Shown here piece after piece: positions 732 to 54,000 of a DNA stretch of 64,000 nucleotides (the first letter of the stretch is position 1; each line of letters starts with the position of its first letter). The notes beneath the pieces are model-generated. The model had not been told where the DNA came from and searched no databases. It saw only the letters and a list, made by a program, of their open reading frames with translations. The stretch is taken from positions 124,001-188,000 of IMG/VR virus record IMGVR_UViG_3300023184_000024. The stretch is one strand, 5' to 3'. The position numbers were made by a program, and so were the translations under genes.

Positions 732-1337
732 ATGCCAGCAGTATTTTTAGTCAGTGATACACACTTCGGACACGCTGGTGTGTGTCGCTTCATGCACCCC
801 GATGATCCTGAAGTAAAATTACGGCCGTGGACTGATCCCGATGAGATGGATGAGGAAATGGTGCGACGATGGAACGACCGTGTGCGACCCAACGACAAGG
901 TCTACCATTTGGGCGATGTTGTCATCAACCGTAAGGCCATGAAAACCTTGCATCGCTTGAATGGTGACAAGGTGTTGATACGCGGCAACCATGACATCTT
1001 CCGTGACGAGGAGTACAGAGAACACTTTCGTGAGTTGCGAGCATACCATGTCATGAACGGAATGATCTTGAGTCATATTCCTGTGCACGAAGCCAGCTTG
1101 GGCAGGTTTGGTACAAACATTCACGGACACTTGCACGCCAGTCGTGTAAAGAAAGTGCGTGGCTACGATGTCGAAACAGGTACCATGTTGTACAGCAACG
1201 AGATTGATCCACGCTACCATTGTGTCTGCGTAGAACAAACCGACTACACGCCCATCTTGTTTGAAGATGTGATCAAACGCATTGAAGCAGAAGGCGGTAG
1301 TGTGGGATTTAAAAACGGCAACGGACCAACTATGTAA
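732..1337 (+). CDS. calcineurin-like metallophosphoesterase
   Basis: SDTHFGH, HLGD, RGNHD, HGHLH motifs; AAGGAG RBS. Confidence 0.9.
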   Translation: MPAVFLVSDTHFGHAGVCRFMHPDDPEVKLRPWTDPDEMDEEMVRRWNDRVRPNDKVYHLGDVVINRKAMKTLHRLNGDKVLIRGNHDIFRDEEYREHFRELRAYHVMNGMILSHIPVHEASLGRFGTNIHGHLHASRVKKVRGYDVETGTMLYSNEIDPRYHCVCVEQTDYTPILFEDVIKRIEAEGGSVGFKNGNGPTM

Positions 1338-2797: not shown

Positions 2798-2827
2798 TTG
2801 TGTTGTATTTAAACAACACCTATGTGG

Positions 2828-2856
2828 TTGACCAGAAATGCTCATTTTGCTATAAT
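2828..2856 (+). promoter_or_regulatory. sigma70-type promoter P1 of RNA operon
   Basis: TTGACC-17-TATAAT with extended -10 TG. Confidence 0.85.
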
Positions 2857-2925
2857 AGAAACAAGTTAAGAAATTAACTGATGTTGCAAAAGACCCAGGA
2901 AGTTGTAGGGTTTTTGCAAAATGAA

Positions 2926-2954
2926 TTGACCGGTATATGCCATTGTGTTATACT
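2926..2954 (+). promoter_or_regulatory. sigma70-type promoter P2 of RNA operon
   Basis: TTGACC-17-TATACT with extended -10 TG. Confidence 0.8.
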
Positions 2955-2979
2955 AGAGACTAGTTAGAAATTAACTAGA

Positions 2980-2991
2980 TGTTCTTTAAAA
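2980..2991 (+). promoter_or_regulatory. boxA-like antitermination site
   Basis: TGTTCTTTAAAA, right after a hairpin downstream of P2; resembles rrn boxA TGCTCTTTAACA. Confidence 0.7.
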
Positions 2992-3029
2992 AATTATTTT
3001 TCGTATAGTAGTCTCGGACTAGTTCCGGG

Positions 3030-3274
3030 CACTATATGTAAACGCATCGGGTTACCAACCCAGTAGGCAACTTGGCAAGAGACTAATCTGTGGCCGCACA
3101 GACTCTTCCAAGTTACATGAAAGATGGAAACGAAGCCGCAAGGTGGATACTGTACAATCGCGCTGGAACTAGTTGGTCTGTAATGTGTTTGGCAAACAAG
3201 TCCGTGGACGGCACGGTAGGGCAGGTTTAAAACTGCGATCGTTGTCAAACATCCCTATGTGTTTTCATATAGTG
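3030..3274 (+). ncRNA. unidentified structured RNA, about 245 nt (contains copy 2 of the stem element)
   Basis: closing stem CACTATATG-T-AAACGCAT / ATGTGTTT-T-CATATAGTG, with several internal hairpins and GNRA loops. Confidence 0.7.
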
Positions 3275-3280
3275 AATTTT

Positions 3281-3416
3281 TAATGTTGTTAGTTCTGCCT
3301 TCTGTAAGCCCTGGGGGAAACGTCAACCCTGAGTAACTATGTGTATAAACGGTACGTCCGGCCGGCAATTCCGTTGAGCATAGCAAATAGTATAGTTGGC
3401 AGAACTAACAATATTA
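3281..3416 (+). ncRNA. unidentified structured RNA, about 136 nt
   Basis: 19-bp terminal stem 3281-3299/3398-3416, inner CTATG/CATAG and AACGG/CCGTT helices. Confidence 0.6.
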
Positions 3417-3492
3417 GGTCTTAAAGTGTTCATGGACGCACGACGGCTTGTCACGCCGTAAGAGTGGGGATCGTTACCCCCTAAGACCGCCA
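3417..3492 (+). tRNA. tRNA-Asp(GTC)
   Basis: ACGGC-TT GTC AC-GCCGT, G73, CCA; atypical T loop ATCGTTA. Confidence 0.9.
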
Positions 3493-3580: not shown

Positions 3581-3644
3581 GAGAGCCACATCGCCTGGAT
3601 ACCTCCTCCTCTTAGGAGCACTGGGTCCTGCAACCGTGGCTCTC
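3581..3644 (+). ncRNA. small hairpin RNA candidate with anti-SD-like motif
   Basis: GAGAGCCAC/GTGGCTCTC stem, CTCCT/AGGAG apical stem. Confidence 0.5.
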
Positions 3645-3652
3645 CCTTATTT

Positions 3653-3732: not shown

Positions 3733-3817
3733 GGAGATGCCGCCGCAATGGTGTGGCAGGGGACTGTAAATCCTCCGACTTCGGTCACGATAGGTTCGAT
3801 CCCTATCATCTCCACCA
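3733..3817 (+). tRNA. tRNA-Tyr(GTA)
   Basis: GGGGA-CT GTA AA-TCCTC, long variable arm, CCA. Confidence 0.95.
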
Positions 3818-4010
3818 GAACGTTCCGAGTGTCTTCGGATACTGTGACCCGCAGGATGAGAAGTAGTGTGACAACTACGGGTGGTAGTCTTCGAACCTAA
3901 AGGCCGCTGGCAATGCGAGAACTGTCCCTGTCGGGAAGCGGGTGGAAGGTACGTGTGAGGGGTATGATAGCGTCATATCTTTCTGTACTATAATTACCGC
4001 CGGGGGATGC
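3818..4010 (+). ncRNA. unidentified structured, probably pseudoknotted RNA, about 190 nt
   Basis: UUCG-capped hairpin, GTAGT/ACTAC hairpin, 3880-3888/3993-4001 stem, crossing ACCCGC/GCGGGT pairing. Confidence 0.65.
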
Positions 4011-4011
4011 A

Positions 4012-4084
4012 GAGCATATTGAAGCACATTGTGTGTCGGCTTGCTGATAAACTTTAAGTAGAGATAGTGTGTTTCAATATGCTT
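4012..4084 (+). repeat. inverted-repeat stem, copy 3 of AAACACAYT/AGTGTGTTT element
   Basis: GAGCATATTGAAGCACATT pairs with AGTGTGTTTCAATATGCTT. Confidence 0.7.
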
Positions 4085-4089
4085 TTTAT

Positions 4090-4167
4090 GCACAGGTGGC
4101 AGAGTGGTCCAATGCAACGGATTGCAAATCCGTAAAACCGTGAGTTCAAATCTCACCCTGTGTTCCA
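4090..4167 (+). tRNA. tRNA-Cys(GCA)
   Basis: ACGGA-TT GCA AA-TCCGT, U73, CCA. Confidence 0.95.
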
Positions 4168-4340: not shown

Positions 4341-4345
4341 TACAC

Positions 4346-4541
4346 CCGGTTACACTTTGACGTCTAAAGTGGGTGGGGCAGTCACCATAGAAAGTGCTGG
4401 GTTTGTAGTGCAACGACCATCCGTACTCTGTCGTGGAGTGGCGGGAACGCATTAGGGGGAGAACACAACTTAAACCCAAAGCGAAAAATGTGTGGACAGA
4501 GTAACAGCTCGGTCCGGGGCCTATGTGGTGTAGGTAGCCGG
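4346..4541 (+). ncRNA. unidentified multi-branched RNA, about 196 nt
   Basis: CCGGTTAC/GTAGCCGG closing stem; CACTTT/AAAGTG, GGTG/CACC, TGGGTTT/AAACCCA, TAGTGC/GCATTA, GGAC/GTCC helices. Confidence 0.7.
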
Positions 4542-4554
4542 ACACTTATAAAAT

Positions 4555-4630
4555 GCGGGATTAGCTCAGTTGGTAGAGCGATACCTTGCCAAGGTATAGG
4601 TCGAGAGTTCGAGCCTCTTATCCCGCTCCA
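4555..4630 (+). tRNA. tRNA-Gly(GCC)
   Basis: ATACC-TT GCC AA-GGTAT, CCA. Confidence 0.95.
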
Positions 4631-5424
4631 TCAAATTCTAAATACTCAAATTCCAATGTTGGTTGTTGTACTGCAATCAGTAGATCGTCAGTGTTGACGA
4701 CTCGCCCCACAACCGGGTGTCCGGTGAATTGTTTTATTTTTTCAATTCCGTGTGTGGCAACAAACTCTGGTGCATGAGTATTGAACCAGTTGATGTAACT
4801 GTTCCAATCAAAATAATTGTCAGTGCCTGTGTTAGTATTGATTACTAGATTAATGCCGGGCTTGACTTGATCATGGAAGCGGCAAGTTTGCATGACGTTG
4901 GTGTCGTCTTGTTGTTCATACAGATACAACGGATGATGCCCTACATGCGGATTTTGCAAACGTATATCACCAAATTCAAGATTGATCTTGGCAGGGTATT
5001 CCAGTGGATCTATTGCAAACATTGTATCGTTGAACCATTCAATCTGCAACCAACTATTACGAAGGCTTCCGCTTTCAAGTGCGTGTAGTGCAAAATGTAG
5101 TTCGTGTAATATGTCATCATGTTCTGCAGGTATGTTTTCAAATCCATTGGCAAGATAAGCTTCAATGTCCTTGTGTAATTTTGTGGTCACTGCAACATTG
5201 TAAGAGTCACGTTGCCAATCCCAACCCAATTCTTGTTTGGCACGATGCACAAGTTTTTCAAAATATTGTATGGTGTATTTTTGAGGATCACGAAAAATAG
5301 CGTGTGGGTCAACGGTCCATTGTTGTTTAATCAAAGATAGATATTTCTTTGCCAAATTTGTATCGTTTAACTTGCAATACAAGGGCGGAATGTTATAAAA
5401 TTTTACAACAAAATCATGAGTCAT
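4618..5424 (-). CDS. hypothetical protein
   Basis: 268-aa ORF, TAAATA just upstream; stop lies within tRNA-Gly 3' end. Confidence 0.75.
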   Translation of the reverse strand: MTHDFVVKFYNIPPLYCKLNDTNLAKKYLSLIKQQWTVDPHAIFRDPQKYTIQYFEKLVHRAKQELGWDWQRDSYNVAVTTKLHKDIEAYLANGFENIPAEHDDILHELHFALHALESGSLRNSWLQIEWFNDTMFAIDPLEYPAKINLEFGDIRLQNPHVGHHPLYLYEQQDDTNVMQTCRFHDQVKPGINLVINTNTGTDNYFDWNSYINWFNTHAPEFVATHGIEKIKQFTGHPVVGRVVNTDDLLIAVQQPTLEFEYLEFDGAG

Positions 5425-6451: not shown

Positions 6452-8011
6452 ATGTTTGATAATACTAAACCCAATATTGTAATCTTAACCGACCATACCG
6501 ACCCTTTACTGATGCTCAAGCTGTTTGGTGCCAGTAAAGTTGCCGCAGAATTGCGCATGGCCGGTTTTCAAGTGGCAGTGATTAATCACCTACATCTATT
6601 TACAGTAGAAGAAATTAAAAACATACTAGTACAACTAGTCAGTGATCAAACTGTGTTTGTTGGCACTAGTCCGTTTTTCTATAAAAATATCGAGAATGTG
6701 TTGACTGATCATGAATTTGATCACGAGCAAGGCGGTAAAAAATATGGAACCAAAGAATTAGGCAGTTTTTTGCCACACGGAATCAAGTACAATCAAGAAA
6801 TCAAGCACTTGATCAAAGGAATTAACCCCAACTGTAAGTTTGTCATTGGCGGCCCCGACGCACAAGATCGACAGTACAACAAAGACTACGATTATGTCAT
6901 TGTTGGCTACGGAGACAACAGTGGTCCCAATTTGGCCAGACATTTGGCCTACGGCGAACCTTTGGAAAAATCGCATCGTAGTTTGTACGGACCAGTCATT
7001 GTCGACGATAGATTGGCATCTAATTATAACTTTAATTCGTCGCTGATGAGCTACGAAGATCATGATGCTCTGCTGCCTGGAGAGACCATGCTGACCGAAA
7101 TTGCACGTGGTTGTATTTTCCGCTGTGGCTTTTGCAGTTACCCTCTGAATGGTAAGAAGAAATTAGATCATATTAAATTAGATGACATTCTCTATCAAGA
7201 ATTCATGGACAACTACGAAAAGTACGGTATAACAAGATACATGTTCAGTGATGATACCTACAACGACAGTGTAGATAAAATTAAGATGATGCATGCAGTC
7301 AGTAAACGTTTGCCATTTCAACTTGAATACTGGGCTTGCTTGCGTTTAGATTTACTAGGAGCACACCCCGAAACAATCGATTTGCTGTATGAAAGCGGTC
7401 TTCGTGCCATGATGTTTGGCATCGAAACACTGCATGAAAAAGCCAGTAAGATTATTGGCAAGGGCGGCAGTCGAGCCAAGCAAATTGCCACCATCAATTA
7501 CATCAAAGAAAAGTACGGCAACAATGTAATGATGCACGGGTCCTTTATATTTGGACTTCCTGAAGAGCCAATAGAGTCTATGTTGGACACAGCTGATCGA
7601 TTGGTGTCAGGAGAAATCAAACTTGACTCCTGGGCCATTCATGCATTTAGATTACAACACAAAGGTATGAGTTATACCAGCGAGTTTGATTTGAATCCTG
7701 AAAAGTATGGATACGAACCATACGATAATACATTAGGCGGCAATCGCCTAATTTGGAAAAACAAGTTTACCAACTTTTACGAGTGCGAGAAACTGGCACA
7801 AGAAACACTCAAGCGCGGCGCCATTAAACTAAAACTTAACAAAATTGCCGGTGTAACCAGTATGTTTATTGCAGGGCTGGGTTTTGATTTACAGTACTCG
7901 GCTAATAAAAACGTTGTAGACTTTGACTGGCATCAAATTGATTTGGCCAAACAACGACGCAGTGCAGAATACAAAGAATTGTTGTACAAACAACTCAACA
8001 TTCAACCATAA
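6452..8011 (+). CDS. B12-binding-type radical SAM protein
   Basis: ARGCIFRCGFC (CxxxCxxC), VIGGP, FSDDT, FGIET, FIFGLP motifs. Confidence 0.85.
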   Translation: MFDNTKPNIVILTDHTDPLLMLKLFGASKVAAELRMAGFQVAVINHLHLFTVEEIKNILVQLVSDQTVFVGTSPFFYKNIENVLTDHEFDHEQGGKKYGTKELGSFLPHGIKYNQEIKHLIKGINPNCKFVIGGPDAQDRQYNKDYDYVIVGYGDNSGPNLARHLAYGEPLEKSHRSLYGPVIVDDRLASNYNFNSSLMSYEDHDALLPGETMLTEIARGCIFRCGFCSYPLNGKKKLDHIKLDDILYQEFMDNYEKYGITRYMFSDDTYNDSVDKIKMMHAVSKRLPFQLEYWACLRLDLLGAHPETIDLLYESGLRAMMFGIETLHEKASKIIGKGGSRAKQIATINYIKEKYGNNVMMHGSFIFGLPEEPIESMLDTADRLVSGEIKLDSWAIHAFRLQHKGMSYTSEFDLNPEKYGYEPYDNTLGGNRLIWKNKFTNFYECEKLAQETLKRGAIKLKLNKIAGVTSMFIAGLGFDLQYSANKNVVDFDWHQIDLAKQRRSAEYKELLYKQLNIQP

Positions 8012-8014
8012 TCG

Positions 8015-8043
8015 TTGACTGCTGACTCAACATCTGTTATAAT
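8015..8043 (+). promoter_or_regulatory. sigma70-type promoter
   Basis: TTGACT-17-TATAAT with TG extension, upstream of tRNA-Leu. Confidence 0.85.
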
Positions 8044-8054
8044 ACAATAATTAA

Positions 8055-8131
8055 GCCCAGGTGATGGAATTGGTATACGTGTTGGTCTTAGAAGCCAAAT
8101 TTTGCGAGTTCGAGTCTCGCCCTGGGCACCA
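8055..8131 (+). tRNA. tRNA-Leu(TAG), short variable loop
   Basis: TTGGT-CT TAG AA-GCCAA, only 5-nt variable region, A73, CCA. Confidence 0.9.
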
Positions 8132-8139
8132 ATAAATGT

Positions 8140-8225
8140 GCGACTGTGGTGAAATAGGTAGACACAAAAGACTTAAAATCTTTCGCTGTAATGGCATGCC
8201 GGTTCGATTCCGGCCAGTCGCACCA
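8140..8225 (+). tRNA. tRNA-Leu(TAA)
   Basis: AAAGA-CT TAA AA-TCTTT, long variable arm, CCA. Confidence 0.95.
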
Positions 8226-8229
8226 ATAT

Positions 8230-8303
8230 GCTCCTGTAGTATAATGGTAATACACGCCCTTGGTAAGGGCGAGCCACAAGTTCAATTCTTGTCTGGAGCA
8301 CCA
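8230..8303 (+). tRNA. tRNA-Thr(GGT)
   Basis: CGCCC-TT GGT AA-GGGCG, CCA. Confidence 0.95.
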
Positions 8304-8307
8304 TATT

Positions 8308-8457
8308 ATGAAACTGTTCGAAGCAACAATAAAAATTAACGGTCGAGAATTCAAAGATCGTGTGGGCGCAAATAATGCCGAAGAAGCACGATTGCTTTTA
8401 CAACAACGTCATGGGCCTAGGGCAGTGCCTTATTTGCCCAAAATGATACCAAGTTAA
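8308..8457 (+). CDS. small hypothetical protein (49 aa)
   Basis: MKLFEATIKING... exactly fills the gap between two tRNAs. Confidence 0.6.
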   Translation: MKLFEATIKINGREFKDRVGANNAEEARLLLQQRHGPRAVPYLPKMIPS

Positions 8458-8459
8458 CA

Positions 8460-8549
8460 GGAAGCGTGGTCGAGTCTGGTTTATGGCAACAGTCTTGAAA
8501 ACTGTCGACTCGCAAGGGTCCGTGAGTTCGAATCTCACCGCTTCCACCA
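8460..8549 (+). tRNA. tRNA-Ser(TGA)
   Basis: ACAGT-CT TGA AA-ACTGT, long variable arm, CCA. Confidence 0.95.
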
Positions 8550-8564
8550 ATATGGAGTATTACT

Positions 8565-8864
8565 ATGTCAAACGAAAACGATAAATTCAACCATAGCAAG
8601 CGTTTGCTCAAAGATGACAATGCAGTCAACAAGCAGGTTAAAATTGCTAAATCACATGGGTTGACCAACAAGGACAAGGCAGTAAAAGAGCCACATCGTT
8701 TGGCCAAACATCATGCCATGGACTGTGGCCGTCCTGGGTGTATGCTATGTGGTAACCCACGCAAAACGTTTAAAGAACTCACTGCTCAGGAAAAACGACT
8801 GTATCAAGATGTTGACAATCCACCATCTAAGCATACAAACGGTACTTTGCCTCCTGAAGAATAA
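8565..8864 (+). CDS. basic hypothetical protein with Cys cluster
   Basis: GGAG RBS; CGRPGCMLCGNPR putative zinc-binding motif. Confidence 0.75.
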   Translation: MSNENDKFNHSKRLLKDDNAVNKQVKIAKSHGLTNKDKAVKEPHRLAKHHAMDCGRPGCMLCGNPRKTFKELTAQEKRLYQDVDNPPSKHTNGTLPPEE

Positions 8865-8867
8865 TAT

Positions 8868-8943
8868 GCCGCGGTAGCTCATCAGGTAGAGCAGCAGACT
8901 GAAAATCTGTGTGTGGCTGGTTCGAGTCCAGCTCGTGGCACCA
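8868..8943 (+). tRNA. tRNA-Phe(GAA)
   Basis: GCAGA-CT GAA AA-TCTGT, CCA. Confidence 0.95.
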
Positions 8944-8947
8944 ACAA

Positions 8948-9022
8948 CGGTCCTTAGTTCAATGGATAGAATGCTTGGCTTCGAACCAAGCGGTGTGGGT
9001 TCGATTCCTGCAGGACCGGCCA
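8948..9022 (+). tRNA. tRNA-Arg(TCG)
   Basis: CTTGG-CT TCG AA-CCAAG, CCA. Confidence 0.92.
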
Positions 9023-9032
9023 GGCCATATAT

Positions 9033-9764
9033 ATGTACATGCATTATGTACAGGAAATTAACCCTTGCCCCAGTGACTGGGCAACACAGTTTAAGTTAAC
9101 TGATTTCTATCAGCACATAGCCAAAGATTATAATCACGTAATCAGTAGTCACAAAGAAATGACTGTGTTAAAGGCAGCATTGCACCACACAGTGTACGAA
9201 ACTGGTCGCAGGTTTTGTGACCAATACGGCATACTCGATGCCACTCCGTACTATTACATTTTATCTTTGCTAGATATCAATCCAGAAAAAATTGTTGACC
9301 TAGGCTGTGGAGACAATGTTTTTTCCAAAACAATTCCTGGACTTGTTGGCATTGATGCTGATCCAAAAAGCAAGTGCGACATTCATGATTTTTTTGATCA
9401 AGATTTTGTCACGGGCCATAAAGAATTCTGTGATGCATTGATCACTATCAACACCATACATTTTTCATCGCTGGATACTATCACCCAAAGACTAAACTGG
9501 TGCCAACAGTTATTAAAACCCGGTGGGCGTGCTTTTGTTTCATTTAACATAGAAACTTGGTTAATGCACACAACAACACAACGATGTCAAGAATTATTTG
9601 GGCCTTGGCCCAGAGTTGAAGATGTAATTGCTTTTGTTGATCGGGCCGTCACCGATGCTGATTTAAAATTGTTGATCTATGATTTTCCTATATCACGGGT
9701 GTCTGCGGTGTCGAGCATACGTGACGACTACAATGGGAACATAAGATTGGTATTCCAAAAATGA
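9033..9764 (+). CDS. class I SAM-dependent methyltransferase
   Basis: IVDLGCG, GID, LLKPGG motifs. Confidence 0.8.
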   Translation: MYMHYVQEINPCPSDWATQFKLTDFYQHIAKDYNHVISSHKEMTVLKAALHHTVYETGRRFCDQYGILDATPYYYILSLLDINPEKIVDLGCGDNVFSKTIPGLVGIDADPKSKCDIHDFFDQDFVTGHKEFCDALITINTIHFSSLDTITQRLNWCQQLLKPGGRAFVSFNIETWLMHTTTQRCQELFGPWPRVEDVIAFVDRAVTDADLKLLIYDFPISRVSAVSSIRDDYNGNIRLVFQK

Positions 9765-10435
9765 TCAAACACGTATTTTTATTTTTTATTCCTGGGAGTG
9801 CCGGGAATTTTGTTTCAAGGTGTTTGAACTTGGTTGATGAGAATTGCCATTGTTGGGCAACCGAAGAACAAGCAGTTAGGTCACTGCCGATGACTCAAAG
9901 ACAAGACTTGCTGTGTTATACAGAACAAAAACAATATAAAAAATGGACGGACTTTGAACATCGACTTGAATTACACACTCGTCGATTTTTGCTAACAGAC
10001 CTGCCAGATAACTCAGTCAGTATTTGGCCAACCCACCCTGACTATGCTGTGCTCGATCGTGGCATTGCCGGCGGTGATGATCAATCATTTGTGTTTTACA
10101 TCGACCCCAGTGATAACATGGATTGGGTTGTGTTAAATGCGCTGTACAAAGACAGTTTTATCAATCGACGATGGTTAGAAATTGGAGAAAAGATGAGATT
10201 AGATTCAGAAATCAATAAAATTAACTTGACTAGCATCATCAATGGTGCTACAATATGTTGTAATGAGATTCAACGTATCTGCGACTTAATTGGCCAACCT
10301 TTTTCTGACCAAGCTAGATCAAGGATAATTGACCTTTGGCAACAGTGGCATAACACTACTTTGGCAAAAGATCGATTTGCTGAATTTCAAAAACAAATCG
10401 GGTTTAACCTAAGGAGTAATCATGTCCAAACTTAA
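9761..10435 (+). CDS. hypothetical protein
   Basis: 224-aa ORF coupled by ATGA overlap; N-terminal PGSAGN loop. Confidence 0.7.
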   Translation: MIKHVFLFFIPGSAGNFVSRCLNLVDENCHCWATEEQAVRSLPMTQRQDLLCYTEQKQYKKWTDFEHRLELHTRRFLLTDLPDNSVSIWPTHPDYAVLDRGIAGGDDQSFVFYIDPSDNMDWVVLNALYKDSFINRRWLEIGEKMRLDSEINKINLTSIINGATICCNEIQRICDLIGQPFSDQARSRIIDLWQQWHNTTLAKDRFAEFQKQIGFNLRSNHVQT

Positions 10436-10892
10436 CTTAGAAGAAGTTAAACGTTTCATTCAGGCCCAAGGTCCAGATACTAAAATTTATCTAGGTGCTG
10501 ACAGCGAGCGTTTTAAACTTGATAAAGTATGGTGGGCAGAATACACTGTGGCCATTGTGGTACACATCAACGGCAAGAATGGTTGTAAGATTTTTGGTGA
10601 GATATCCAAGGAACGTGACTATGATCAACGTGCAGACCGACCAAGCATGCGTTTAATGAACGAAGTTTATCGTGTCAGTGAAATGTTTCAACGCTTACAA
10701 GAAGCATTGGTTGACCGCAGTGTGGAAGTACATTTGGACATTAACCCCAATGAAATGCATGGATCGAGTTGTGTAATTCAACAGGCCATTGGATATATTC
10801 GCGGAACTTGCAATGTGATTCCAATGGTCAAACCCGATGCATTTGCCGCAAGCTACGCCGCAGATCGGTTGCGTAGTTTAAAAGTTGCTTAA
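10422..10892 (+). CDS. RNase H-like protein, YkuK/DUF458 family
   Basis: IYLGADS, EVHLDIN, KPDAFAASYAAD motifs; AAGGAG RBS. Confidence 0.8.
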   Translation: MSKLNLEEVKRFIQAQGPDTKIYLGADSERFKLDKVWWAEYTVAIVVHINGKNGCKIFGEISKERDYDQRADRPSMRLMNEVYRVSEMFQRLQEALVDRSVEVHLDINPNEMHGSSCVIQQAIGYIRGTCNVIPMVKPDAFAASYAADRLRSLKVA

Positions 10893-10905
10893 CTTGGAGA
10901 AAAAA

Positions 10906-11142
10906 ATGGCAAGAATTGTCAGTGAAGATGCTGTAAAAGCAGTGGAGAATCGATTCGATTTAGTTTTAATTGCGTCAAGACGAGTTCGAGAACTTCGTAA
11001 TGGATGGCAAAGGAAAGTAGACAGCGACAACGGTGATTTAGTCACTGCATTGCGTGAAATAGAGCAAGGATTGGTTGGTAGAGATTACTTACTTAAGCCC
11101 ACTGACATTGATCGGCGCAGGAAAAAAACTTCAGAGAAGTAA
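10906..11142 (+). CDS. rpoZ: RNA polymerase omega subunit homologue
   Basis: MARI..EDA...VENRFDLVLIASRR.REL, VTALREI signature. Confidence 0.9.
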   Translation: MARIVSEDAVKAVENRFDLVLIASRRVRELRNGWQRKVDSDNGDLVTALREIEQGLVGRDYLLKPTDIDRRRKKTSEK

Positions 11143-11215
11143 TTCAATAATAACTATATGATGAGTCAAATATAGGTCAAGTACATTGACCTATTACAAT
11201 TTTAAAGGAAAACAA

Positions 11216-12115
11216 ATGACAACAACAATCACAATCAAAGATAAAGCAGTAAACACCACATACCAAAATGTTACAGGATTAACAGGTGGTTCTGGAGATG
11301 GTGCCGTATTTGACGTTACAAAGACCAACGGGGTTTACTCTGTAGTTCTTGACAGTCTTGCCGCCAGCGCAGGACATGGCTATGTTGCCGGAGACACGAT
11401 CACTCTTGCTGGTACAGCATTGGGTGGCACAGTTACTAACAACTTAATCGTTACAGTAGCCACAGTTGGCACATCGGGTAAAATTGCTACGTTTGGCGTA
11501 GTAGGTACAGGTCGTGTCGGCGACGGCTCGGTTGATGTCACTGTAGATGTCACAGGCACCACAGGTGTTGACACATACACCATGGGTGGTGCTAGTACTG
11601 AATATACAATTACTAAGACTGCTGACAATGTAAAGTTAGCCAGCGGATTGGTTAGTAATATGGAATTCAACCTTGCTGATCATGAGCGTGTTGTGTTCAC
11701 GGACAAAGCTATTGCTTATGATGCCGCAGGTCGTGCAGGCGATGTGTATGCATTGTTGGCAGCCGCACTAGGTGTCGCTGATGTTACCAAAGCCTACACA
11801 GGTATTGGCATCGATCTTGCTGATAAAGGCTGGACAAATAAACAATTAGCAACAGCATTGTTGTCTACAGATGTTTACAAAACTGATGCTGGTGGTGTTA
11901 GTGATGAGACATTTATCAAGCACGTTTACAAGAATGTGTTTGGCACCGATGCTACACTAGCACAGGTCACAGACTACACAGCATGGATGACCAACAGCAA
12001 GTTGTCGCAGGCTGATGTGCTAGTTGCTGCCAGTGAGTTGTCTGCGTTTGAAACCACAATTGGCCTGGTTGGATTGGCAACCACTGGTATTGAGTATACT
12101 CCAGTAACAGTGTAA
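11216..12115 (+). CDS. Thr/Gly-rich surface protein with C-terminal DUF4214-like (S-layer-associated) domain
   Basis: ERVVFTDKAIAYD and SDETFIKHVYKNVFG motifs; AAAGGA RBS. Confidence 0.7.
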   Translation: MTTTITIKDKAVNTTYQNVTGLTGGSGDGAVFDVTKTNGVYSVVLDSLAASAGHGYVAGDTITLAGTALGGTVTNNLIVTVATVGTSGKIATFGVVGTGRVGDGSVDVTVDVTGTTGVDTYTMGGASTEYTITKTADNVKLASGLVSNMEFNLADHERVVFTDKAIAYDAAGRAGDVYALLAAALGVADVTKAYTGIGIDLADKGWTNKQLATALLSTDVYKTDAGGVSDETFIKHVYKNVFGTDATLAQVTDYTAWMTNSKLSQADVLVAASELSAFETTIGLVGLATTGIEYTPVTV

Positions 12116-12117
12116 CC

Positions 12118-12756
12118 TTGCCGGTACATTTAATCAATCCACTGCCGATATATCAAGAAGAGTCTGGCTATACTTTGTCAGACTCTGAATTATCGATACT
12201 CAACAATATCAAATATAACTCAGTGAGCAAGCCGTTTATCTGGGAATATGCATCAGAGTATACAATATTAGATCACCCTGGACTGGCAGATCTAAAGGCT
12301 GTATTACAACAGCACTTGGATAGGTATCGCAAAGAAATATGTGGTGTGGTTGATCAAGAGTTTTATATTACCAACAGTTGGTTAAGTAAAATCGAAGCTA
12401 TCCAAGGTAACTTATCTGAACATTCGCACGACAACAGTTTAATCAGTGGTGTGTTTTACATTGATGTCCCGCCCGACACTCCTTTGTGTTTTCGTAATCA
12501 TAGTCAGATTTTTAAAAAACATGATTTTTATTTTTCAAACAGTGTTGATACACAATACCGACAAGAAACATATTGTGTACCAGTAAAATCTGGAGACATT
12601 GTGCTATTCCCAAGTTGGGTAGATCATTACGTTGAAAAAAATCAAACAAGTCATGTTCGAAGAAGTTTGGCATTTGATAGTTTTGTTCGAGGGCTGTTTG
12701 ATGGTAAAATGTTGCACAACGATAAAACTGGTTTTAGTACGCTAATGATTAAATAA
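12118..12756 (+). CDS. putative 2OG-Fe(II) oxygenase (TIGR02466-like)
   Basis: HSH.NS.ISGVFY, GDIVLFPSWVDHYV, RRSLAF motifs. Confidence 0.8.
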   Translation: MPVHLINPLPIYQEESGYTLSDSELSILNNIKYNSVSKPFIWEYASEYTILDHPGLADLKAVLQQHLDRYRKEICGVVDQEFYITNSWLSKIEAIQGNLSEHSHDNSLISGVFYIDVPPDTPLCFRNHSQIFKKHDFYFSNSVDTQYRQETYCVPVKSGDIVLFPSWVDHYVEKNQTSHVRRSLAFDSFVRGLFDGKMLHNDKTGFSTLMIK

Positions 12757-12760
12757 AAGT

Positions 12761-13083
12761 TAAGACTGTATGAAGTAGAGAGAAAAGGATTCAAGACGCG
12801 GGGGCAGTGCCCGCCAGGTCCACCAAAAACACACTGCCAGTCGCGCTGGTTGTATGGTACTATTCTAGAAATAAGGTTCGAATCCTTAGTGTGTTTTTGA
12901 TGGGCCTGACACAGGATCGATTGGGTCAAGAGTATTGAAATGGACAGTCCGGCAATGTAGAAGCCGTTAGGGTTGGGGGAACTCGGCCGAAGACACAAAA
13001 ACCGTAAATGCAAACGACGAACAGTTCGCTTTAGCCGCCTAAACTCGGCTTAGGGTAGGAAATACCTCGTAACAGAAACCACC
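12761..13083 (+). ncRNA. ssrA: two-piece (circularly permuted) tmRNA
   Basis: acceptor piece ends ...GCGGG-GGCAGTG-CCCGC-CAGGTCC-ACCA (12825) before the coding piece starting GGGCCTG (12902); G3:U70; tag ANDEQFALAA* at 13010-13042; 5' end approximate. Confidence 0.92.
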
Positions 13084-13107
13084 AGCCCGCTTCGGCGGGC
13101 TTTTTTT
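13084..13107 (+). terminator. intrinsic terminator
   Basis: AGCCCGC-TTCG-GCGGGCT followed by a T run. Confidence 0.9.
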
Positions 13108-13120
13108 CTTGGAGTAAACT

Positions 13121-13360
13121 ATGGGCAATCAAACCGATTATTTTGAACGCATTGGCTACAAACCCACCTGGTATCTAGGAGATAGGGTGTTTGGGCATTG
13201 GAATAAAATTCCTTTTGTTGGAACAGTGGGCAATGATACTGTGATTAATCATACTGAAGGGCCACGGATCACTATTCATTTAGACCTTCCCATCAAGTAC
13301 AAGAGTCAAATACACAATATTATTGTAGTTAATCATAAAGATATCAAGCTTTACAAGTAA
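13121..13360 (+). CDS. hypothetical protein
   Basis: GGAG RBS, 79-aa ORF. Confidence 0.7.
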   Translation: MGNQTDYFERIGYKPTWYLGDRVFGHWNKIPFVGTVGNDTVINHTEGPRITIHLDLPIKYKSQIHNIIVVNHKDIKLYK

Positions 13361-51067: not shown

Positions 51068-54000
51068 TTAACTATTACTCCGTATAAACCTTGCTGCCTC
51101 TGTTTCGGTTACTTGTAAAGCTACCCCTGATCCCGGACTGTACCATGACCGACCGCGCTCTACTTCTATTACAATTTCATATCCAGCCGGAGGGGCAATG
51201 CCAAATTCTATAGTGACTGGTTCTCCATCTGTTATGATATACTCATTGTAAGCAGTCAGTTTAATTCCGCCCACAAATACTCCAATTGCACTGGCATTAA
51301 TTTCAGTAGAACCAACGTCAGCAATAGAAATATTATCAGCTACAAACGTTGTAGTAGAGCCATCTCCCATGAACGTGTTTGATACTATATAATTCTGATA
51401 CTGTACTGGCAAGATATTGCCTGGTCCAATATTATAAACATAGGAGCCGACATGATGACTGGCCACACCGGTTCCGGCTGTGCCTCTTCTTAGCCCGCTG
51501 ACTGTATTAGTAATTGTGTCTCTGTTACGATATGTTATGCGTTCACCGTTGATGGTTATTAACCCAAATAATCCATATTCTAAATCAGGCTCGTCGAGAT
51601 GTGTAACATCGTCAACGTAGATAATATTATCATATTCAGTCAGCGGCTGTGTTAATACTGTAGTTGTTTGAGCATTGATACGGTAAGAGGTTTGCAAGCC
51701 CCGCATATCTTGGAAGATTCGGAAAGCAATTGCGCCCGGTGCCACACTTTGCGTAAACAATGTAATTGCAATAACATCGGCCGCACCAACTGTTGGTCCA
51801 GTGATGTCGACAATCGATCCATCAATTGAGTAATCTAGGCCGGAGAACAAGAATGCACCGTTGCGGGTCACAATCACTCTGGTTGGGTCTAAAATAATTC
51901 TGCCAGTGTCAAATCGGTTGGTCTGAATCAGCAGGCCTTCACTGTAATCAAAAGATCCGGGGTCGTCGTTTATTGTGCCCACATCATACAATGTGTCATC
52001 GTATGCTTCAGTGATCTGAATACCGCTTGATGTCGGGCCAACAAACACTTCTGTTAAAATATCTTGTTGTGATGTGTCGTTGAAAGTGGTAATTCCAATG
52101 ACATCGCCAACAACTGGTGTTACTCCACCAGTTGGTTTAAAAATTAATGTGTCGCCACTGACATAGTACGGTGATGCTGTTCTAACCGAGATTAAAATTG
52201 CAGCGCCAACAGGAGGGTAATAGGCCATTGTAATGGTGCGTGTGTTAACTCCGTCCCACGGGTCTAACATAAATCCAACGCCAAGAGTCAATGGTTGACC
52301 ATTGACGTAAACAGATACGTCGTTGTCTGCAATCAATCCTTGACTAAATGCCCCTTTATCTGGCAGATAATAACTTAGACTGGATCCATCGTCGATGTAC
52401 TCAACTGCCTCAGCAGGTCGGGCTCTTATTCCGTTTTTAGTGACAATCAAGTTTGCAGGATTTGTACCTTGTAAACTATTTGTCAATATAATACTTTGAG
52501 AACCATCAGAAGTTACAGATTGTATCAATGGCACACTCCAGGAATATGATGGGTTTACTGTGTCAGTTCCCAGTGCAGTGTATGTTATTCTATCTGTTTG
52601 GCCGTATGTTATTCCAAAACCTAATAGAGTATATCCAATTCCAAATTCCCCAAAAGTGTAATTTGTTGTTACTTCTCCGTTGACAAAAATAACAAAACTA
52701 TCAATCAGCGAATAATTCATGGGAATTATCACAGATTGTCCAATGATATCTGAACCTACAATAGTATCTGTGTACAATTTGTTGCCACCACCAATTGAGT
52801 ACACATTTACGTTAACTAAATCTCCATCTAATGCTTGTGCAATTACTGTGACTGTTTTGTTAACCCAGTCAACTGTATAATCCATTCCTAGGTGTAGTTC
52901 TATGCCTTGCGTTTGATTAAAGACAATAATGTTTACAGGATAAGGCTCAGCAGATGCGTATGACACTGTAGGCATTGCTTCTGACCATGCAAAGTTAACT
53001 TCATCGGACGGGAATCCGTGACCGTTACGATCCCAATCTGCCCCAGGAGTTGTAAATACCCTCATGTCTAATGTGTCAAATATTGCGCCAGGTACCAGTT
53101 CTTCTGGCGCATGACTTGAGTAAGTATCAATGAATTCTGCACCGTCAACTATGATCGGATTTGGTCCAGTTGTTGGTGGAGCACCGTCGTATGCGGGTGC
53201 AGGCAATACACCTAAGTACGGGTCTGTAAATTCACTGCTGTAGATAGCGTCGAGAATTGCTGGATCGTAACTTGGTAACCCATCAGGTCCGTAATTAATG
53301 TTATCGTACGGAGTGTTGTCAAAATTACCAACATCAAACCCGGTATCTTCGTCAAAGTCAGGTGCATCAACTTGAACCCCTGGGTAAGCAATGCCTGAGA
53401 TTAATAAAGCAAGATCTAACCCAGGTTCGTTTACTCTAGGTTGGTAATATCCCATGGTACGATCAACCCCGCTTAGGTCGCCGGCCGGTATCAACGTCCA
53501 TTGACTAGGATCAAACGATTCTCCGACTACCTCAGAGTCTGCTTGCCATACCCGATCATCATACCGTACCAGATCGCCATAGTTGTAAGTAACGTTTGGC
53601 TCCCAGGTCAGGATGTCAGTCTGATATTGATACCTGTCATACTTGATGGTGGTGTTGATATCTCTTACTAACGAATTGCCCATGACTGCAACTGCTTGAG
53701 CACCGCCACCTTGTCCGCTTACAAGATTAATAATTGCTGTAGTTGAGTACCCAACGCCGGGATTAACAACGTCAACTGCAATTACGGCCCCGGCACTGTT
53801 GATTCGTGCAACCATTTCTGCTGGTGTAATGCAATCTCCAGTTACCACTACCTCAGGTGGTGCAATATAATTTGCTCCGCCAGCAACAATGGTGACACTT
53901 TCGATGTTTAGTAGATAATTTTGATACCACTGATCGTAAGGGAATGTTTGCCAAATACCATTGGTAGAAGGAACACTACTGGTTGTGCTTAGTCGACCAG

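What the first reader, a model, noticed from the sequence alone, without database searches (positions are those of the whole stretch)
3818..4010. Pseudoknotted ~190-nt RNA starting at the tRNA-Tyr 3' end
It has hairpins AGTGTC-TTCG-GATACT and GTAGT-GTGACA-ACTAC, and a multibranch domain closed by GGTGGTAGT/ATTACCGCC. ACCCGC (3847-3852) is complementary to GCGGGT (3938-3943) inside that domain, which makes a pseudoknot. Purine-rich junctions suggest a compact tertiary fold or ribozyme-like complexity. It is bounded by a tRNA CCA and by the conserved stem at 4012.
Basis: partly seen in the sequence, partly recalled or inferred. Interest (0 to 1): 0.7.

Follow-up and report, generated by a model that had tools for sequence, protein, structure and literature searches.

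The report
New structured RNA among phage tRNAs
Between two tRNA genes of a 353-kb freshwater phage lies a gene for a ~200-nt RNA with a conserved double-pseudoknot fold, which matches no known RNA family, is shared by at least 160 uncultivated phage contigs, and has an unknown function.

Summary

- **Family size:** homologues occur in at least 160 IMG/VR contigs, giving about 135 distinct sequences. There is one copy per near-complete 320-350 kb phage genome.
- **Context:** it nearly always lies inside a tRNA array on the tRNA strand. It often abuts the upstream tRNA's CCA and the next tRNA's first base.
- **Fold supported by covariation:** hairpins P1-P5, a long-range helix P6 (3924-3929/4003-4008), and a variable arm P7 that has a k-turn consensus in about two thirds of members.
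- **Pseudoknots:** PK1 pairs the P2 loop ACCC with GGGU 3879-3882. PK2 pairs GGU 3883-3885 with the P4 loop ACC. On the model-fitted alignment, 93.6% of cells pair and 45 of 58 pairs show compensatory change.
one of the two hairpins (GTAGT/ACTAC) holds. The first hairpin, the closing helix and the ACCCGC/GCGGGT pseudoknot show almost no compensation (none in the last two) and break in homologues.
- **Core:** the junction (consensus AGCGGGUGG ... AAUUACCGCC) is almost invariant.
- **Known families:** there is no Rfam 15 match, no match in GenBank phages, and no description found in two full-text searches.
- **Expression:** one lake metatranscriptome holds the core at depth about 12,000, against 6-27 on the flanking tRNAs.

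Its function is unknown. My best guess is a trans-acting RNA released by tRNA processing.

The parts
3733..3817 (+). tRNA-Tyr (GTA). Its CCA end abuts the element.
   Evidence: ARAGORN and Rfam tRNA at 35 bits. In 39 of 82 homologues an upstream tRNA ends 0-2 nt before the element, and the tRNA identity varies.
3818..3823 (+). 5' linker GAACGU. It is unpaired, and C3821 is invariant.
   Evidence: Alignment A1. No covarying partner was found in the mutual-information scan.
3824..3839 (+). P1 hairpin, UCCGAG / UUCGGA, with a variable 4-6 nt loop.
Evidence: 6 of 6 pairs show changes on both sides, and 94% of cells pair.
3842..3854 (+). P2 hairpin, CUGU / GCAG, with the conserved loop GACCC (3846-3850).
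   Evidence: 99.7% paired. 3 of 4 pairs are compensatory, for example CG:49 against GC:38.
3855..3862 (+). J2/3, a purine-rich linker (GAUGAGAA).
   Evidence: Conserved and unpaired in A1 and A2.
3863..3878 (+). P3 hairpin, GUAGU / ACUAC, loop GUGACA.
   Evidence: 5 of 5 pairs are compensatory.
3879..3882 (+). PK1 3' strand, GGGU. It pairs with the P2 loop ACCC (3847-3850), giving an H-type pseudoknot that encloses P3.
   Evidence: 98-99.7% paired. Independent compensatory switches are seen: ACAC/GUGU in the L029 clade, GUCC/GGAC in L084 and L323, and G(U)CCC/GGGC in L170, L075, L293 and L327.
3883..3885 (+). PK2 5' strand, GGU. It pairs with ACC 3895-3897 in the P4 loop.
   Evidence: 99% paired. 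L084 has CU where the others have GG, matched by AG in its loop. This pairing rests on few independent events.
3887..3904 (+). P4 hairpin, GUCUU / AAGGC, with an 8-nt loop NNAACCNA.
   Evidence: 99-100% paired, and 4 of 5 pairs are compensatory.
3905..3917 (+). P5 hairpin, CGC / GCG, with a conserved 7-nt loop UGGCAAU. It is directly stacked on P4. The loop has a U...A spacing like a T-loop, which is an inference.
   Evidence: 100% paired, with the inner pair CG:67 / UA:22.
3924..3929 (+). P6 5' strand, GUCCCU. This is the long-range helix that closes the 3' domain.
   Evidence: It pairs with 4003-4008. On A2 100% of cells pair and 6 of 6 pairs are compensatory. Examples are GAAUC/GAUUC, GUUCC/GGAAU and UUCUUUUUG/CAGAAAGAA.
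3930..3948 (+). Core 5' strand, GUCGGGAAGCGGGUGGAAG. AGCGGGUGG is nearly invariant. GGUGG 3941-3945 can pair with CCGCC 3997-4001.
   Evidence: Invariant columns in A1. With independent ascertainment only positions 3934, 3936, 3945 and 3947 vary. The GGUGG/CCGCC helix never varies, so it is neither supported nor refuted.
3949..3988 (+). P7 arm. Its base is GUACG/UGUAC, followed by a 3-nt bulge UGU and then a variable hairpin. In about 2/3 of members the first three positions after the bulge are G.A, A.G and U.U, which is the k-turn consensus. In this window they are Watson-Crick or G-U pairs.
   Evidence: 4 of 5 base pairs are compensatory, and pair 3949-3988 occurs as GC, CG, UA and AU. Columns 338-340/418-420 are unpaired in 59-64 of 91 sequences.
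3989..4001 (+). Core 3' strand, UAUAAUUACCGCC. AAUUACCGCC is invariant.
4003..4008 (+). P6 3' strand, GGGGAU.
   Evidence: See the P6 5' strand entry.
4009..4020 (+). Conserved 3' tail, GCAGAGCAU(A/U)U. No partner was found. In this window 4012-4020 is also part of the 5' arm of the next hairpin.
   Evidence: In 30 of 82 homologues the next tRNA starts within -3 to +5 nt of this end.
4012..4085 (+). Long AT-rich hairpin followed by UUUUUAU. It is a neighbour, not part of the family.
   Evidence: Adding it takes the fold z-score to -3.2. It is kept only in close relatives. The same type of stem occurs at 205-270 and 3030-3274.
4090..4167 (+). tRNA-Cys (GCA), the next gene.
2828..2856 (+). Candidate sigma70-type promoter for this sub-cluster (TTGACC-17-TATAAT with an upstream TG).
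   Evidence: Consensus scan, 11 of 12 matches. This is an inference only.

Best explanation
Window 3818-~4020 (+) is the gene of a previously undescribed family of ~200-nt structured non-coding RNAs. The family is carried by large (320-525 kb) uncultivated freshwater phages.

**Shown:**
- The sequence is under RNA-level selection for one specific fold.
- The 5' domain has P1, P2 and P3, with the P2 loop pairing to GGGU just 3' of P3 (PK1). It is followed by a second small pseudoknot (GGU with the P4 loop ACC) and the stacked hairpins P4 and P5.
- The 3' domain is closed by the long-range helix P6. It contains a nearly invariant junction (AGCGGGUGG ... AAUUACCGCC) and a variable arm, P7, which is a k-turn in most members.
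- The gene lies on the tRNA strand inside tRNA arrays and is often flush with a tRNA on both sides.
- Its core is strongly over-represented in one lake metatranscriptome.

**Inferred:**
- It is transcribed as part of the polycistronic tRNA precursor.
- It is released by the tRNA-processing enzymes. RNase P cutting at the next tRNA's 5' end would make its 3' end. In this phage, the 3' end may instead form by an event at the 4012-4085 hairpin.
- Maturation of the upstream tRNA's 3' end would make its 5' end.

**Guessed:** the released, compact RNA acts in trans. Its invariant junction would be the binding or active site for a protein, a tRNA or a small ligand connected with translation or tRNA metabolism during infection.
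For: **Family and distribution**
- Homologues were reached by three independent anchors: the tRNA-Tyr 3' end, the 17-nt core motif and the 3' motif.
- Covariance model R1 scores them at 137-235 bits.
- There is one copy in the window's own genome. Four near-complete relatives have one copy each, and the 525-kb genome has two.

**Covariation**
- On the MAFFT alignment A1, 96.3% of cells pair and 34 of 46 pairs are compensatory. The covariation score is 0.368, against 0.146 for shuffles and about 0.05 for slid controls.
- On the model-fitted alignment A2, 93.6% of cells pair and 45 of 58 pairs are compensatory, with a score of 0.386 against 0.138.
- An unsupervised mutual-information scan recovers the same helices.
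- Many G-U pairs mark the + strand as the RNA strand.

**Context**
- 77 of 82 loci have tRNAs within 3 kb, all on the same strand.
- 39 of 82 are flush with an upstream tRNA.
- 30 of 82 are flush with a downstream tRNA.

**Expression**
- In metatranscriptome X17 the depth is 7,500-12,200 over 3870-3950. It is 6-27 on tRNA-Glu and tRNA-Tyr, and 97-169 on tRNA-Cys.
- In four DNA metagenomes the same core/flank ratio is only about 5-14.

**No known family**
- Rfam has no match at the gathering score or at E<=10, in the window or in 12 divergent loci.
- There is no match in 50,697 GenBank phage records.
Against: - No RNA ends were mapped. Only assembled contigs were available, and their ends reflect sequence variants, not molecule ends.
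- Only one of four RNA runs shows enrichment. X15 and X16 show ratios like DNA.
- In about 14 loci the element follows an ORF stop codon by 1-7 nt instead of a tRNA. tRNA processing therefore cannot be the universal way to make its 5' end.
- No conserved neighbouring protein gene was found.
- The phage encodes no L7Ae, Ro/TROVE or SmpB partner.
- The trans-acting role and any link to translation rest on context only.
- The GGUGG/CCGCC helix and the T-loop reading of P5 have no covariation support.
Confidence: 0.6

Rival explanations
1. It is a self-cleaving ribozyme that cuts at its own 5' edge, just after the upstream tRNA's CCA or the upstream ORF's stop codon. That would make it a portable processing module that works behind any upstream sequence.
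For: - The 5' boundary is flush with unrelated upstream features: various tRNAs at 0-2 nt and ORF stop codons at 1-7 nt.
- It has a compact double-pseudoknot fold with a nearly invariant junction, as in the glmS and HDV-like ribozymes, which cut at their 5' ends. That comparison comes from my own knowledge.
- A metallophosphoesterase gene lies in the same array at 732-1337. It could in principle heal a cyclic-phosphate end, but this is speculation.
Against: - There is no match to any Rfam self-cleaver.
- The first two nucleotides after the junction are variable, and the 5' linker has no detected pairing partner.
- No read-level evidence of a cut was available.
- A 2',3'-cyclic phosphate on A76 would block aminoacylation unless it were repaired.
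Confidence: 0.12
2. It is a cis-acting sensor, of the riboswitch, attenuator or T-box type, that controls transcription or processing of the downstream tRNAs. The hairpin plus U-run at 4012-4089 would be its expression platform. The two GGGUGG copies would be alternative partners of UACCGCC.
For: - The core is as invariant as a riboswitch aptamer.
- The hairpin with UUUUUAU follows directly, and its 5' arm overlaps the conserved tail.
- GGGUGGUA ... UACCGCC resembles the T-box sequence GGGUGGNACCGCG. This comparison is from memory and was not tested.
Against: - The hairpin is present only in close relatives.
- In 30 of 82 loci a tRNA starts right at the element's end, leaving no room for an expression platform.
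- The alternative helix cannot form in L084 and L323, while PK1 and PK2 are kept there by compensation.
- Rfam T-box gives no hit.
- High steady-state abundance of the core fits a stable RNA better.
Confidence: 0.1
3. The RNA folds: hairpin AGUGUC/GAUACU, a multibranch domain closed by GGUGGUAGU/AUUACCGCC, and the pseudoknot ACCCGC/GCGGGU.
For: All of these strings are complementary in this window. 88% of cells pair across homologues, because the strands are conserved.
Against: - Neither the closing helix nor the crossing helix shows compensatory change. In the closing helix 7 of 9 pairs depart only by unpaired cells, and in the crossing helix 36 of 76 sequences are unpaired at one position.
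- Their nucleotides are used by P1, P2, PK1 and PK2, all of which do covary.
- C3849 to A is compensated at G3880 (to U), not at G3941.
Confidence: 0.03
4. It is not an RNA gene. It could be a degenerate tRNA or tmRNA piece, a DNA-level site (recombination or mobile-element end), or a chance structure in a spacer.
For: - There is a weak Rfam tmRNA_permuted hit at 3790-4011, 23 bits against a threshold of 47.
- The minus strand of 3879-3899 resembles a T-arm (repeat I9).
- The element sits in varied contexts, as a mobile cassette would.
- The fold energy is no better than for shuffles.
Against: - The tmRNA hit covers only 60 of 213 model positions and starts inside tRNA-Tyr's 3' part; I did not inspect its alignment.
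- ARAGORN calls nothing in the element.
- Covariation is strand-specific, with many G-U pairs, and far exceeds the shuffled and slid controls.
- RNA-level enrichment was seen.
Confidence: 0.03

Closest known systems
Stable RNAs 'species 1 and 2' (rnaC, rnaD) of the T4 tRNA gene cluster (from my own knowledge of the T4 literature)
   Same: They are non-tRNA stable RNAs encoded inside a phage tRNA cluster, co-transcribed and processed with the tRNAs. Their function is still unknown.
   Different: There is no homology. Model R1, run with filters off, scores at most 3 bits anywhere in the T2 tRNA cluster. The T4 RNAs are smaller, and I know of no report that they carry this double-pseudoknot fold.
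GOLLD and ROOL large ornate RNAs (Rfam families; cryo-EM preprint 10.1101/2024.12.08.627333, listed)
   Same: They are orphan, highly structured RNAs of phages and prophages. They are often next to tRNA genes, and GOLLD was first seen in lake metagenomes. No protein partner is known.
   Different: They are 3-4 times larger. There is no Rfam match here, even at E<=10. Whether this RNA multimerises was not tested.
T-box leader (antiterminator T-box sequence) and RNase P L15 loop
   Same: This RNA has GGGUGG motifs and GGU:ACC pairings that look like the way those RNAs hold a tRNA's NCCA end. It also has a k-turn, a T-loop-like hairpin and a pseudoknot, and it lies in a tRNA-related context.
   Different: The order of elements differs. 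There is no specifier loop, and no amino-acid-related gene or terminator lies downstream in most loci. Here the GGU pairs with the RNA's own loop. Neither family gives an Rfam hit.
Permuted (two-piece) tmRNA
   Same: It gave the only weak Rfam hit, at 23 bits. The same phage carries a real permuted tmRNA at 12733-13133.
   Different: The hit is far below the 47-bit threshold and covers 60 of 213 model positions, beginning inside tRNA-Tyr's 3' part. ARAGORN calls no tmRNA or tag reading frame in the element.

Membership tests
Any Rfam 15 family (4227 models) | A score at or above the family's gathering threshold. | tested here: not met
   No family other than tRNA and tmRNA matches in the window. 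Within 3818-4020 the only hit at E<=10 is tmRNA_permuted at 23.4 bits against a threshold of 47. Nothing overlaps the element in 12 divergent homologous loci.
tRNA / tmRNA | A cloverleaf or tRNA-like domain with an acceptor stem and T arm. | tested here: not met
   ARAGORN finds 27 tRNAs and 1 tmRNA in the window but none in 3818-4089. Rfam tRNA has no hit there.
RNase P RNA (bacterial A/B, archaeal, type T) | Conserved regions CR-I and CR-V forming the P4 pseudoknot, and a match to an RNase P covariance model. | tested here: not met
   No RNase P model appears, even at E<=10, in the 1.1-kb or 13.5-kb searches. Here the core helix is nested inside P6 and does not cross it.
T-box leader | Stem I with a specifier loop, a T-box antiterminator competing with a terminator, and an amino-acid-related gene downstream. 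| tested here: not met
   There is no Rfam T-box hit. The downstream features are tRNAs, often at 0 nt. Only the GGGUGG...ACCGCC resemblance remains, and that is from memory.
Known self-cleaving ribozymes (hammerhead, HDV-like, glmS, twister, twister-sister, pistol, hatchet, hairpin, VS) | A match to the class consensus, and site-specific self-cleavage. | tested here: not met
   Consensus: there are no Rfam hits. Cleavage activity itself cannot be tested with these tools.
GOLLD / ROOL | A match to the 500-800 nt consensus. | tested here: not met
   There are no hits at E<=10. The non-coding gap here is only 272 nt.
T-even phage stable RNAs rnaC/rnaD | Sequence and structure homology to the RNAs of the T4/T2 tRNA cluster. 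| tested here: not met
   R1 with filters off scores at most 3 bits in the T2 tRNA cluster locus L337.
H-type RNA pseudoknot (structural class) | A hairpin loop pairs with sequence outside the hairpin, and the pairing is kept by compensatory change. | tested here: met
   PK1 (3847-3850 with 3879-3882) is 98-99.7% paired and shows three independent kinds of compensatory switch. PK2 (3883-3885 with 3895-3897) is 99% paired, with compensation in one lineage.
Kink-turn (structural motif) | A canonical stem, a 3-nt bulge, and then tandem sheared G.A / A.G pairs. | tested here: inconclusive
   About 2/3 of homologues have GUACG-UGU-GAU... / ...UGA-UGUAC (columns 338-340/418-420 are non-Watson-Crick in 59-64 of 91 sequences). 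The window's own copy has Watson-Crick or G-U pairs instead. The actual 3D kink was not tested.

The most novel reading that the evidence does not exclude
The RNA is a new class of catalytic or sensing RNA that phages use to manage their own tRNA supply. One possibility is a ribozyme that cuts at its 5' edge and so frees the upstream tRNA or mRNA. Another is a tRNA-binding RNA whose GGU/GGGUGG motifs engage tRNA 3' ends the way RNase P and T-box RNAs do. It would be one of several unknown structured RNAs (window ~3030-3274, ~3582-3646 and 4341-4554) that make these tRNA arrays into operons of non-coding RNAs.
Probability: 0.15. Interest if true: 0.92.

Novelty: categorically new. Interest (0 to 1): 0.78.

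Why it matters
Natural RNA folds with two pseudoknots, a k-turn arm and a junction of about 30 nearly invariant nucleotides have usually turned out to be ribozymes, riboswitches or cores of RNA-protein machines.

This RNA is common in large freshwater phages, with at least 160 contigs and one copy per genome. It is strongly over-represented in one lake metatranscriptome and matches nothing catalogued.

It also shows that phage tRNA arrays carry other structured RNA genes alongside the tRNAs. Three further conserved modules lie in the same array. This gives a concrete handle on an old open question, unanswered since the T4 'species 1 and 2' RNAs: what non-tRNA RNAs in phage tRNA clusters do.

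The alignment, the covariance model and the tested pairings make it ready for probing, structure determination and cleavage or binding assays.

Tried and rejected
- **Relatives through neighbouring proteins.** The 268-aa ORF (4618-5424, minus strand) gave 7 IMG/VR loci with no tRNAs and no element. The radical-SAM ORF (6452-8011) gave none.
- **GenBank phages.** blastn with the window copy and two divergent copies found nothing. The nearest cultured relative by protein is Ralstonia phage RsoM2USA, at 38% amino-acid identity. It lacks the element by blastn and by R1.
- **Bacterial and archaeal genomes.** The 17-nt core motif gave 120 or more hits, but none of the 120 fetched carries the rest of the element. 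A chance count of about 70 is expected from genome size, by my own arithmetic.
- **Partner proteins.** The phage genome has no L7Ae, TROVE or SmpB. The ORFs just upstream of the element in loci without a flanking tRNA are unrelated between clades.
- **Promoter motif.** The motif ACTGTATTTAT seen upstream in some relatives is absent from the window.
- **A 5'/3' terminal helix.** The pairing CGUUCC/GGGAUG predicted by minimum free energy is not kept. The 3' strand covaries with 3924-3929 instead.
- **A hairpin UCCC[UGUC]GGGA.** I rejected it for the same reason.
- **RNA ends.** They could not be read from Logan contigs.
- **Literature.** Two full-text searches and two papers found no description.
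Full report
**Setting**

The window is bases 124001-188000 of a 352,754-bp IMG/VR phage record with direct terminal repeats. Its first 9 kb hold 27 tRNA genes, all on the + strand, and a permuted tmRNA lies at 12733-13133. The finding sits in the 272-nt gap between tRNA-Tyr (3733-3817) and tRNA-Cys (4090-4167). The nearest cultured phage, judged by one protein, is Ralstonia phage RsoM2USA at 38% identity.

**Checking the observation**

As a single sequence the region is unremarkable. The minimum free energy of 3818-4010 is -63 kcal/mol against -60.6 +/- 4.2 for dinucleotide shuffles, z = -0.58. Only the downstream hairpin at 4012-4085 makes the longer stretch stand out, with z = -3.2. The question therefore had to be settled with homologues.

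**Finding homologues**

- Searches through neighbouring proteins failed.
- An exact search for the 25-nt 3' end of tRNA-Tyr in IMG/VR gave 53 loci. In 28 of them blastn found the element at 71-97% identity. In several it was not next to that tRNA, so it is a unit of its own.
- The invariant 17-mer GGGAAGCGGGTGGAAGG then gave at least 119 loci.
- An independent 3' motif gave 44 further loci.
- Covariance model R1 recovers them all at 137-235 bits. This includes six variants with a 50-60 nt insertion after GGGUGGU.
- In total there are about 135 distinct sequences.
- Near-complete genomes of 320-347 kb carry one copy, and a 525-kb genome carries two.
- Many records come from contigs of 260-525 kb. 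The DNA runs that hold the window are lake or freshwater metagenomes.

**The structure**

- GUAGU/ACUAC is confirmed, with 5 of 5 pairs compensatory.
- The first hairpin is only 79% paired.
- The closing helix has no compensatory change, and 7 of 9 pairs depart only by unpaired cells.
- The crossing helix has no compensatory change and is unpaired in 36 of 76 sequences at one position.

My model:
- 96.3% of cells pair, and 34 of 46 pairs have changes on both sides.
- The covariation score is 0.368, against 0.146 for shuffles (0 of 500 reach it) and 0.04-0.09 when partners are slid by 1-3 columns.

On the model-fitted alignment A2 (95 distinct sequences), 93.6% of cells pair, 45 of 58 pairs are compensatory, and the score is 0.386 against 0.138. 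That alignment leans towards the model, so A1 is the fairer test. An unsupervised mutual-information scan ranks the same pairs at the top.

The helices are:

| Helix | Window coordinates | Note |
|---|---|---|
| P1 | 3824-3829 / 3834-3839 | |
| P2 | 3842-3845 / 3851-3854 | loop GACCC |
| P3 | 3863-3867 / 3874-3878 | |
| PK1 | 3847-3850 with 3879-3882 | P2 loop with GGGU |
| PK2 | 3883-3885 with 3895-3897 | GGU with P4 loop ACC |
| P4 | 3887-3891 / 3900-3904 | |
| P5 | 3905-3907 / 3915-3917 | loop UGGCAAU |
| P6 | 3924-3929 / 4003-4008 | long-range |
| Core helix | GGUGG 3941-3945 / CCGCC 3997-4001 | invariant, so untested |
| P7 | 3949-3953 / 3984-3988 | plus a variable hairpin |

- **PK1** rests on three independent kinds of switch: ACAC/GUGU, GUCC/GGAC and G(U)CCC/GGGC.
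- **P6** is the best-supported helix. All six pairs are compensatory and 100% of cells pair on A2. Whole-strand replacements occur, such as GAAUC/GAUUC and UUCUUUUUG/CAGAAAGAA.
  - G3880-U3885 is occupied by PK1 and PK2.
  - GC 3851-3852 belongs to P2.
  - When C3849 becomes A, the compensating change is at G3880, not at G3941.
  - In L084 and L323 the strand GGUGGUA is replaced by GGACCUUA while AUUACCGCC stays unchanged.
- **P7:** about two thirds of members have the k-turn consensus, that is stem, UGU bulge, G.A, A.G, U.U. The window's copy has ordinary pairs there.
- **Core:** it is close to invariant even when ascertained through the other motif. AGCGGGUGG has one exception, and AAUUACCGCC has none.

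**Context**

- In 77 of 82 distinct loci there are tRNAs within 3 kb, all on the element's strand.
- In 39 loci a tRNA ends 0-2 nt before the element. In 30 a tRNA starts within -3 to +5 nt of its end. Many different tRNA identities are involved.
- In about 14 loci the element instead follows an ORF stop codon by 1-7 nt. Those ORFs are unrelated between clades.
- In the window, strong sigma70-like promoters lie upstream at 2828-2856 and 2926-2954.

**Expression**

Six RNA runs hold part of the stretch.
- In lake metatranscriptome X17 the summed contig depth is 7,500-12,200 over 3870-3950. It is 6-27 on tRNA-Glu and tRNA-Tyr, and 97-169 on tRNA-Cys.
- Conserved sequence collects contigs from many relatives, so I laid the same stretch on four DNA metagenomes. 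There the core/flank ratio is only about 5-14. X17 therefore shows roughly a 100-fold RNA-level excess.
- Runs X15 and X16 show ratios like DNA.
- tRNAs are poorly captured by ordinary RNA-seq, and contigs do not show molecule ends. This supports transcription and accumulation, but says nothing about the termini.

**Comparison with what is known**

- No Rfam 15 family matches at the gathering score. Within the element the only hit at E<=10 is tmRNA_permuted at 23 bits (threshold 47), covering 60 of 213 model positions and beginning inside tRNA-Tyr's 3' part.
- Twelve divergent homologous loci give only tRNAs and one unrelated group I intron.
- GenBank phages have no match. RsoM2USA has no match. 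The T2 tRNA cluster, home of the T-even stable RNAs, scores at most 3 bits.
- The 120 bacterial and archaeal hits to the 17-mer that were fetched lack the rest of the element.
- Literature searches found no description.
- The closest analogues are therefore conceptual: the T4 species 1 and 2 RNAs, and GOLLD and ROOL.

**Mechanism**

- **Shown:** an RNA-level, strand-specific, conserved fold; a position inside tRNA transcription units; and accumulation in one metatranscriptome.
- **Inferred:** release by RNase P at the next tRNA and by 3' maturation of the upstream tRNA.
- **Guessed:** a trans-acting role through the invariant junction, probably connected with tRNAs or translation.

I keep two live rivals. 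The first is a 5'-edge self-cleaving ribozyme, which would explain why the element sits flush behind unrelated tRNAs and stop codons. The second is a cis-acting sensor. The sensor is weakened by the lack of any room for an expression platform in 30 loci, and by the fact that the alternative helix cannot form in two lineages.

**Verdict**

This is a real RNA family with no match in Rfam 15, GenBank phages or the literature I searched. Its function is open.

Noticed in passing
window ~3582-3646 (+), between tRNA-Asp and tRNA-Glu: This is a second conserved structured RNA of about 65 nt. An 8-bp outer stem (GAGAGCCA/UGGCUCUC) encloses conserved internal loops and a covarying hairpin. There are 31 distinct homologues, and 13 of 20 RNAalifold pairs have compensatory change. 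It has no Rfam match.
   Followed up: partly
window 4341-4554 (+), between tRNA-Gly(UCC) and tRNA-Gly(GCC): This is a third conserved non-coding module of about 210 nt, 74-86% identical in relatives. In 10 sequences, 20 of 49 predicted pairs have compensatory change. It has no Rfam match at E<=10.
   Followed up: partly
window ~3030-3274 (+), within the ORF-free stretch 2798-3416: This is a multi-helix RNA of about 245 nt, closed by a 22-bp AT-rich stem (CACUAUAUGUAAACGCAUCGGG / CCCUAUGUGUUUUCAUAUAGUG). It is conserved in relatives, and several inner helices covary. The same kind of closing stem recurs at 205-270 and 4012-4085. The 'conserved stem at 4012' therefore belongs to a family of stems.
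   Followed up: partly
window 3417-3492 (+): ARAGORN calls a tRNA-Asp (GTC) here, but the Rfam tRNA model does not report it in any of the searches that covered it. It may be an unusual or degenerate tRNA.
   Followed up: no
window 12733-13133 (+): This is a phage-encoded permuted (two-piece) tmRNA with the tag ANDEQFALAA. It also matches the betaproteobacterial tmRNA model, which hints at a betaproteobacterial host. No SmpB gene was found in the phage genome.
   Followed up: partly
window 732-1337 (+) and 6452-8011 (+): Protein genes are interspersed in the tRNA array. One is a metallophosphoesterase (PHROG 547). The other is a 519-aa ORF that I took from its sequence for a radical-SAM protein; it has no PHROG match and no close relative in IMG/VR.
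   Followed up: no
window 51068-63865 (-): A single ORF of 4265 aa.
   Followed up: no
L093 6439-6638: A group I intron (Rfam, 57.5 bits) lies in the tRNA array of a relative, about 450 nt upstream of its copy of the element.
   Followed up: no
L156, L159, L093, L094, L096, L130 (relatives): Six members carry an extra domain of about 50-60 nt inserted between GGGUGGU and P4. R1 still matches them full-length at 146-174 bits.
   Followed up: partly
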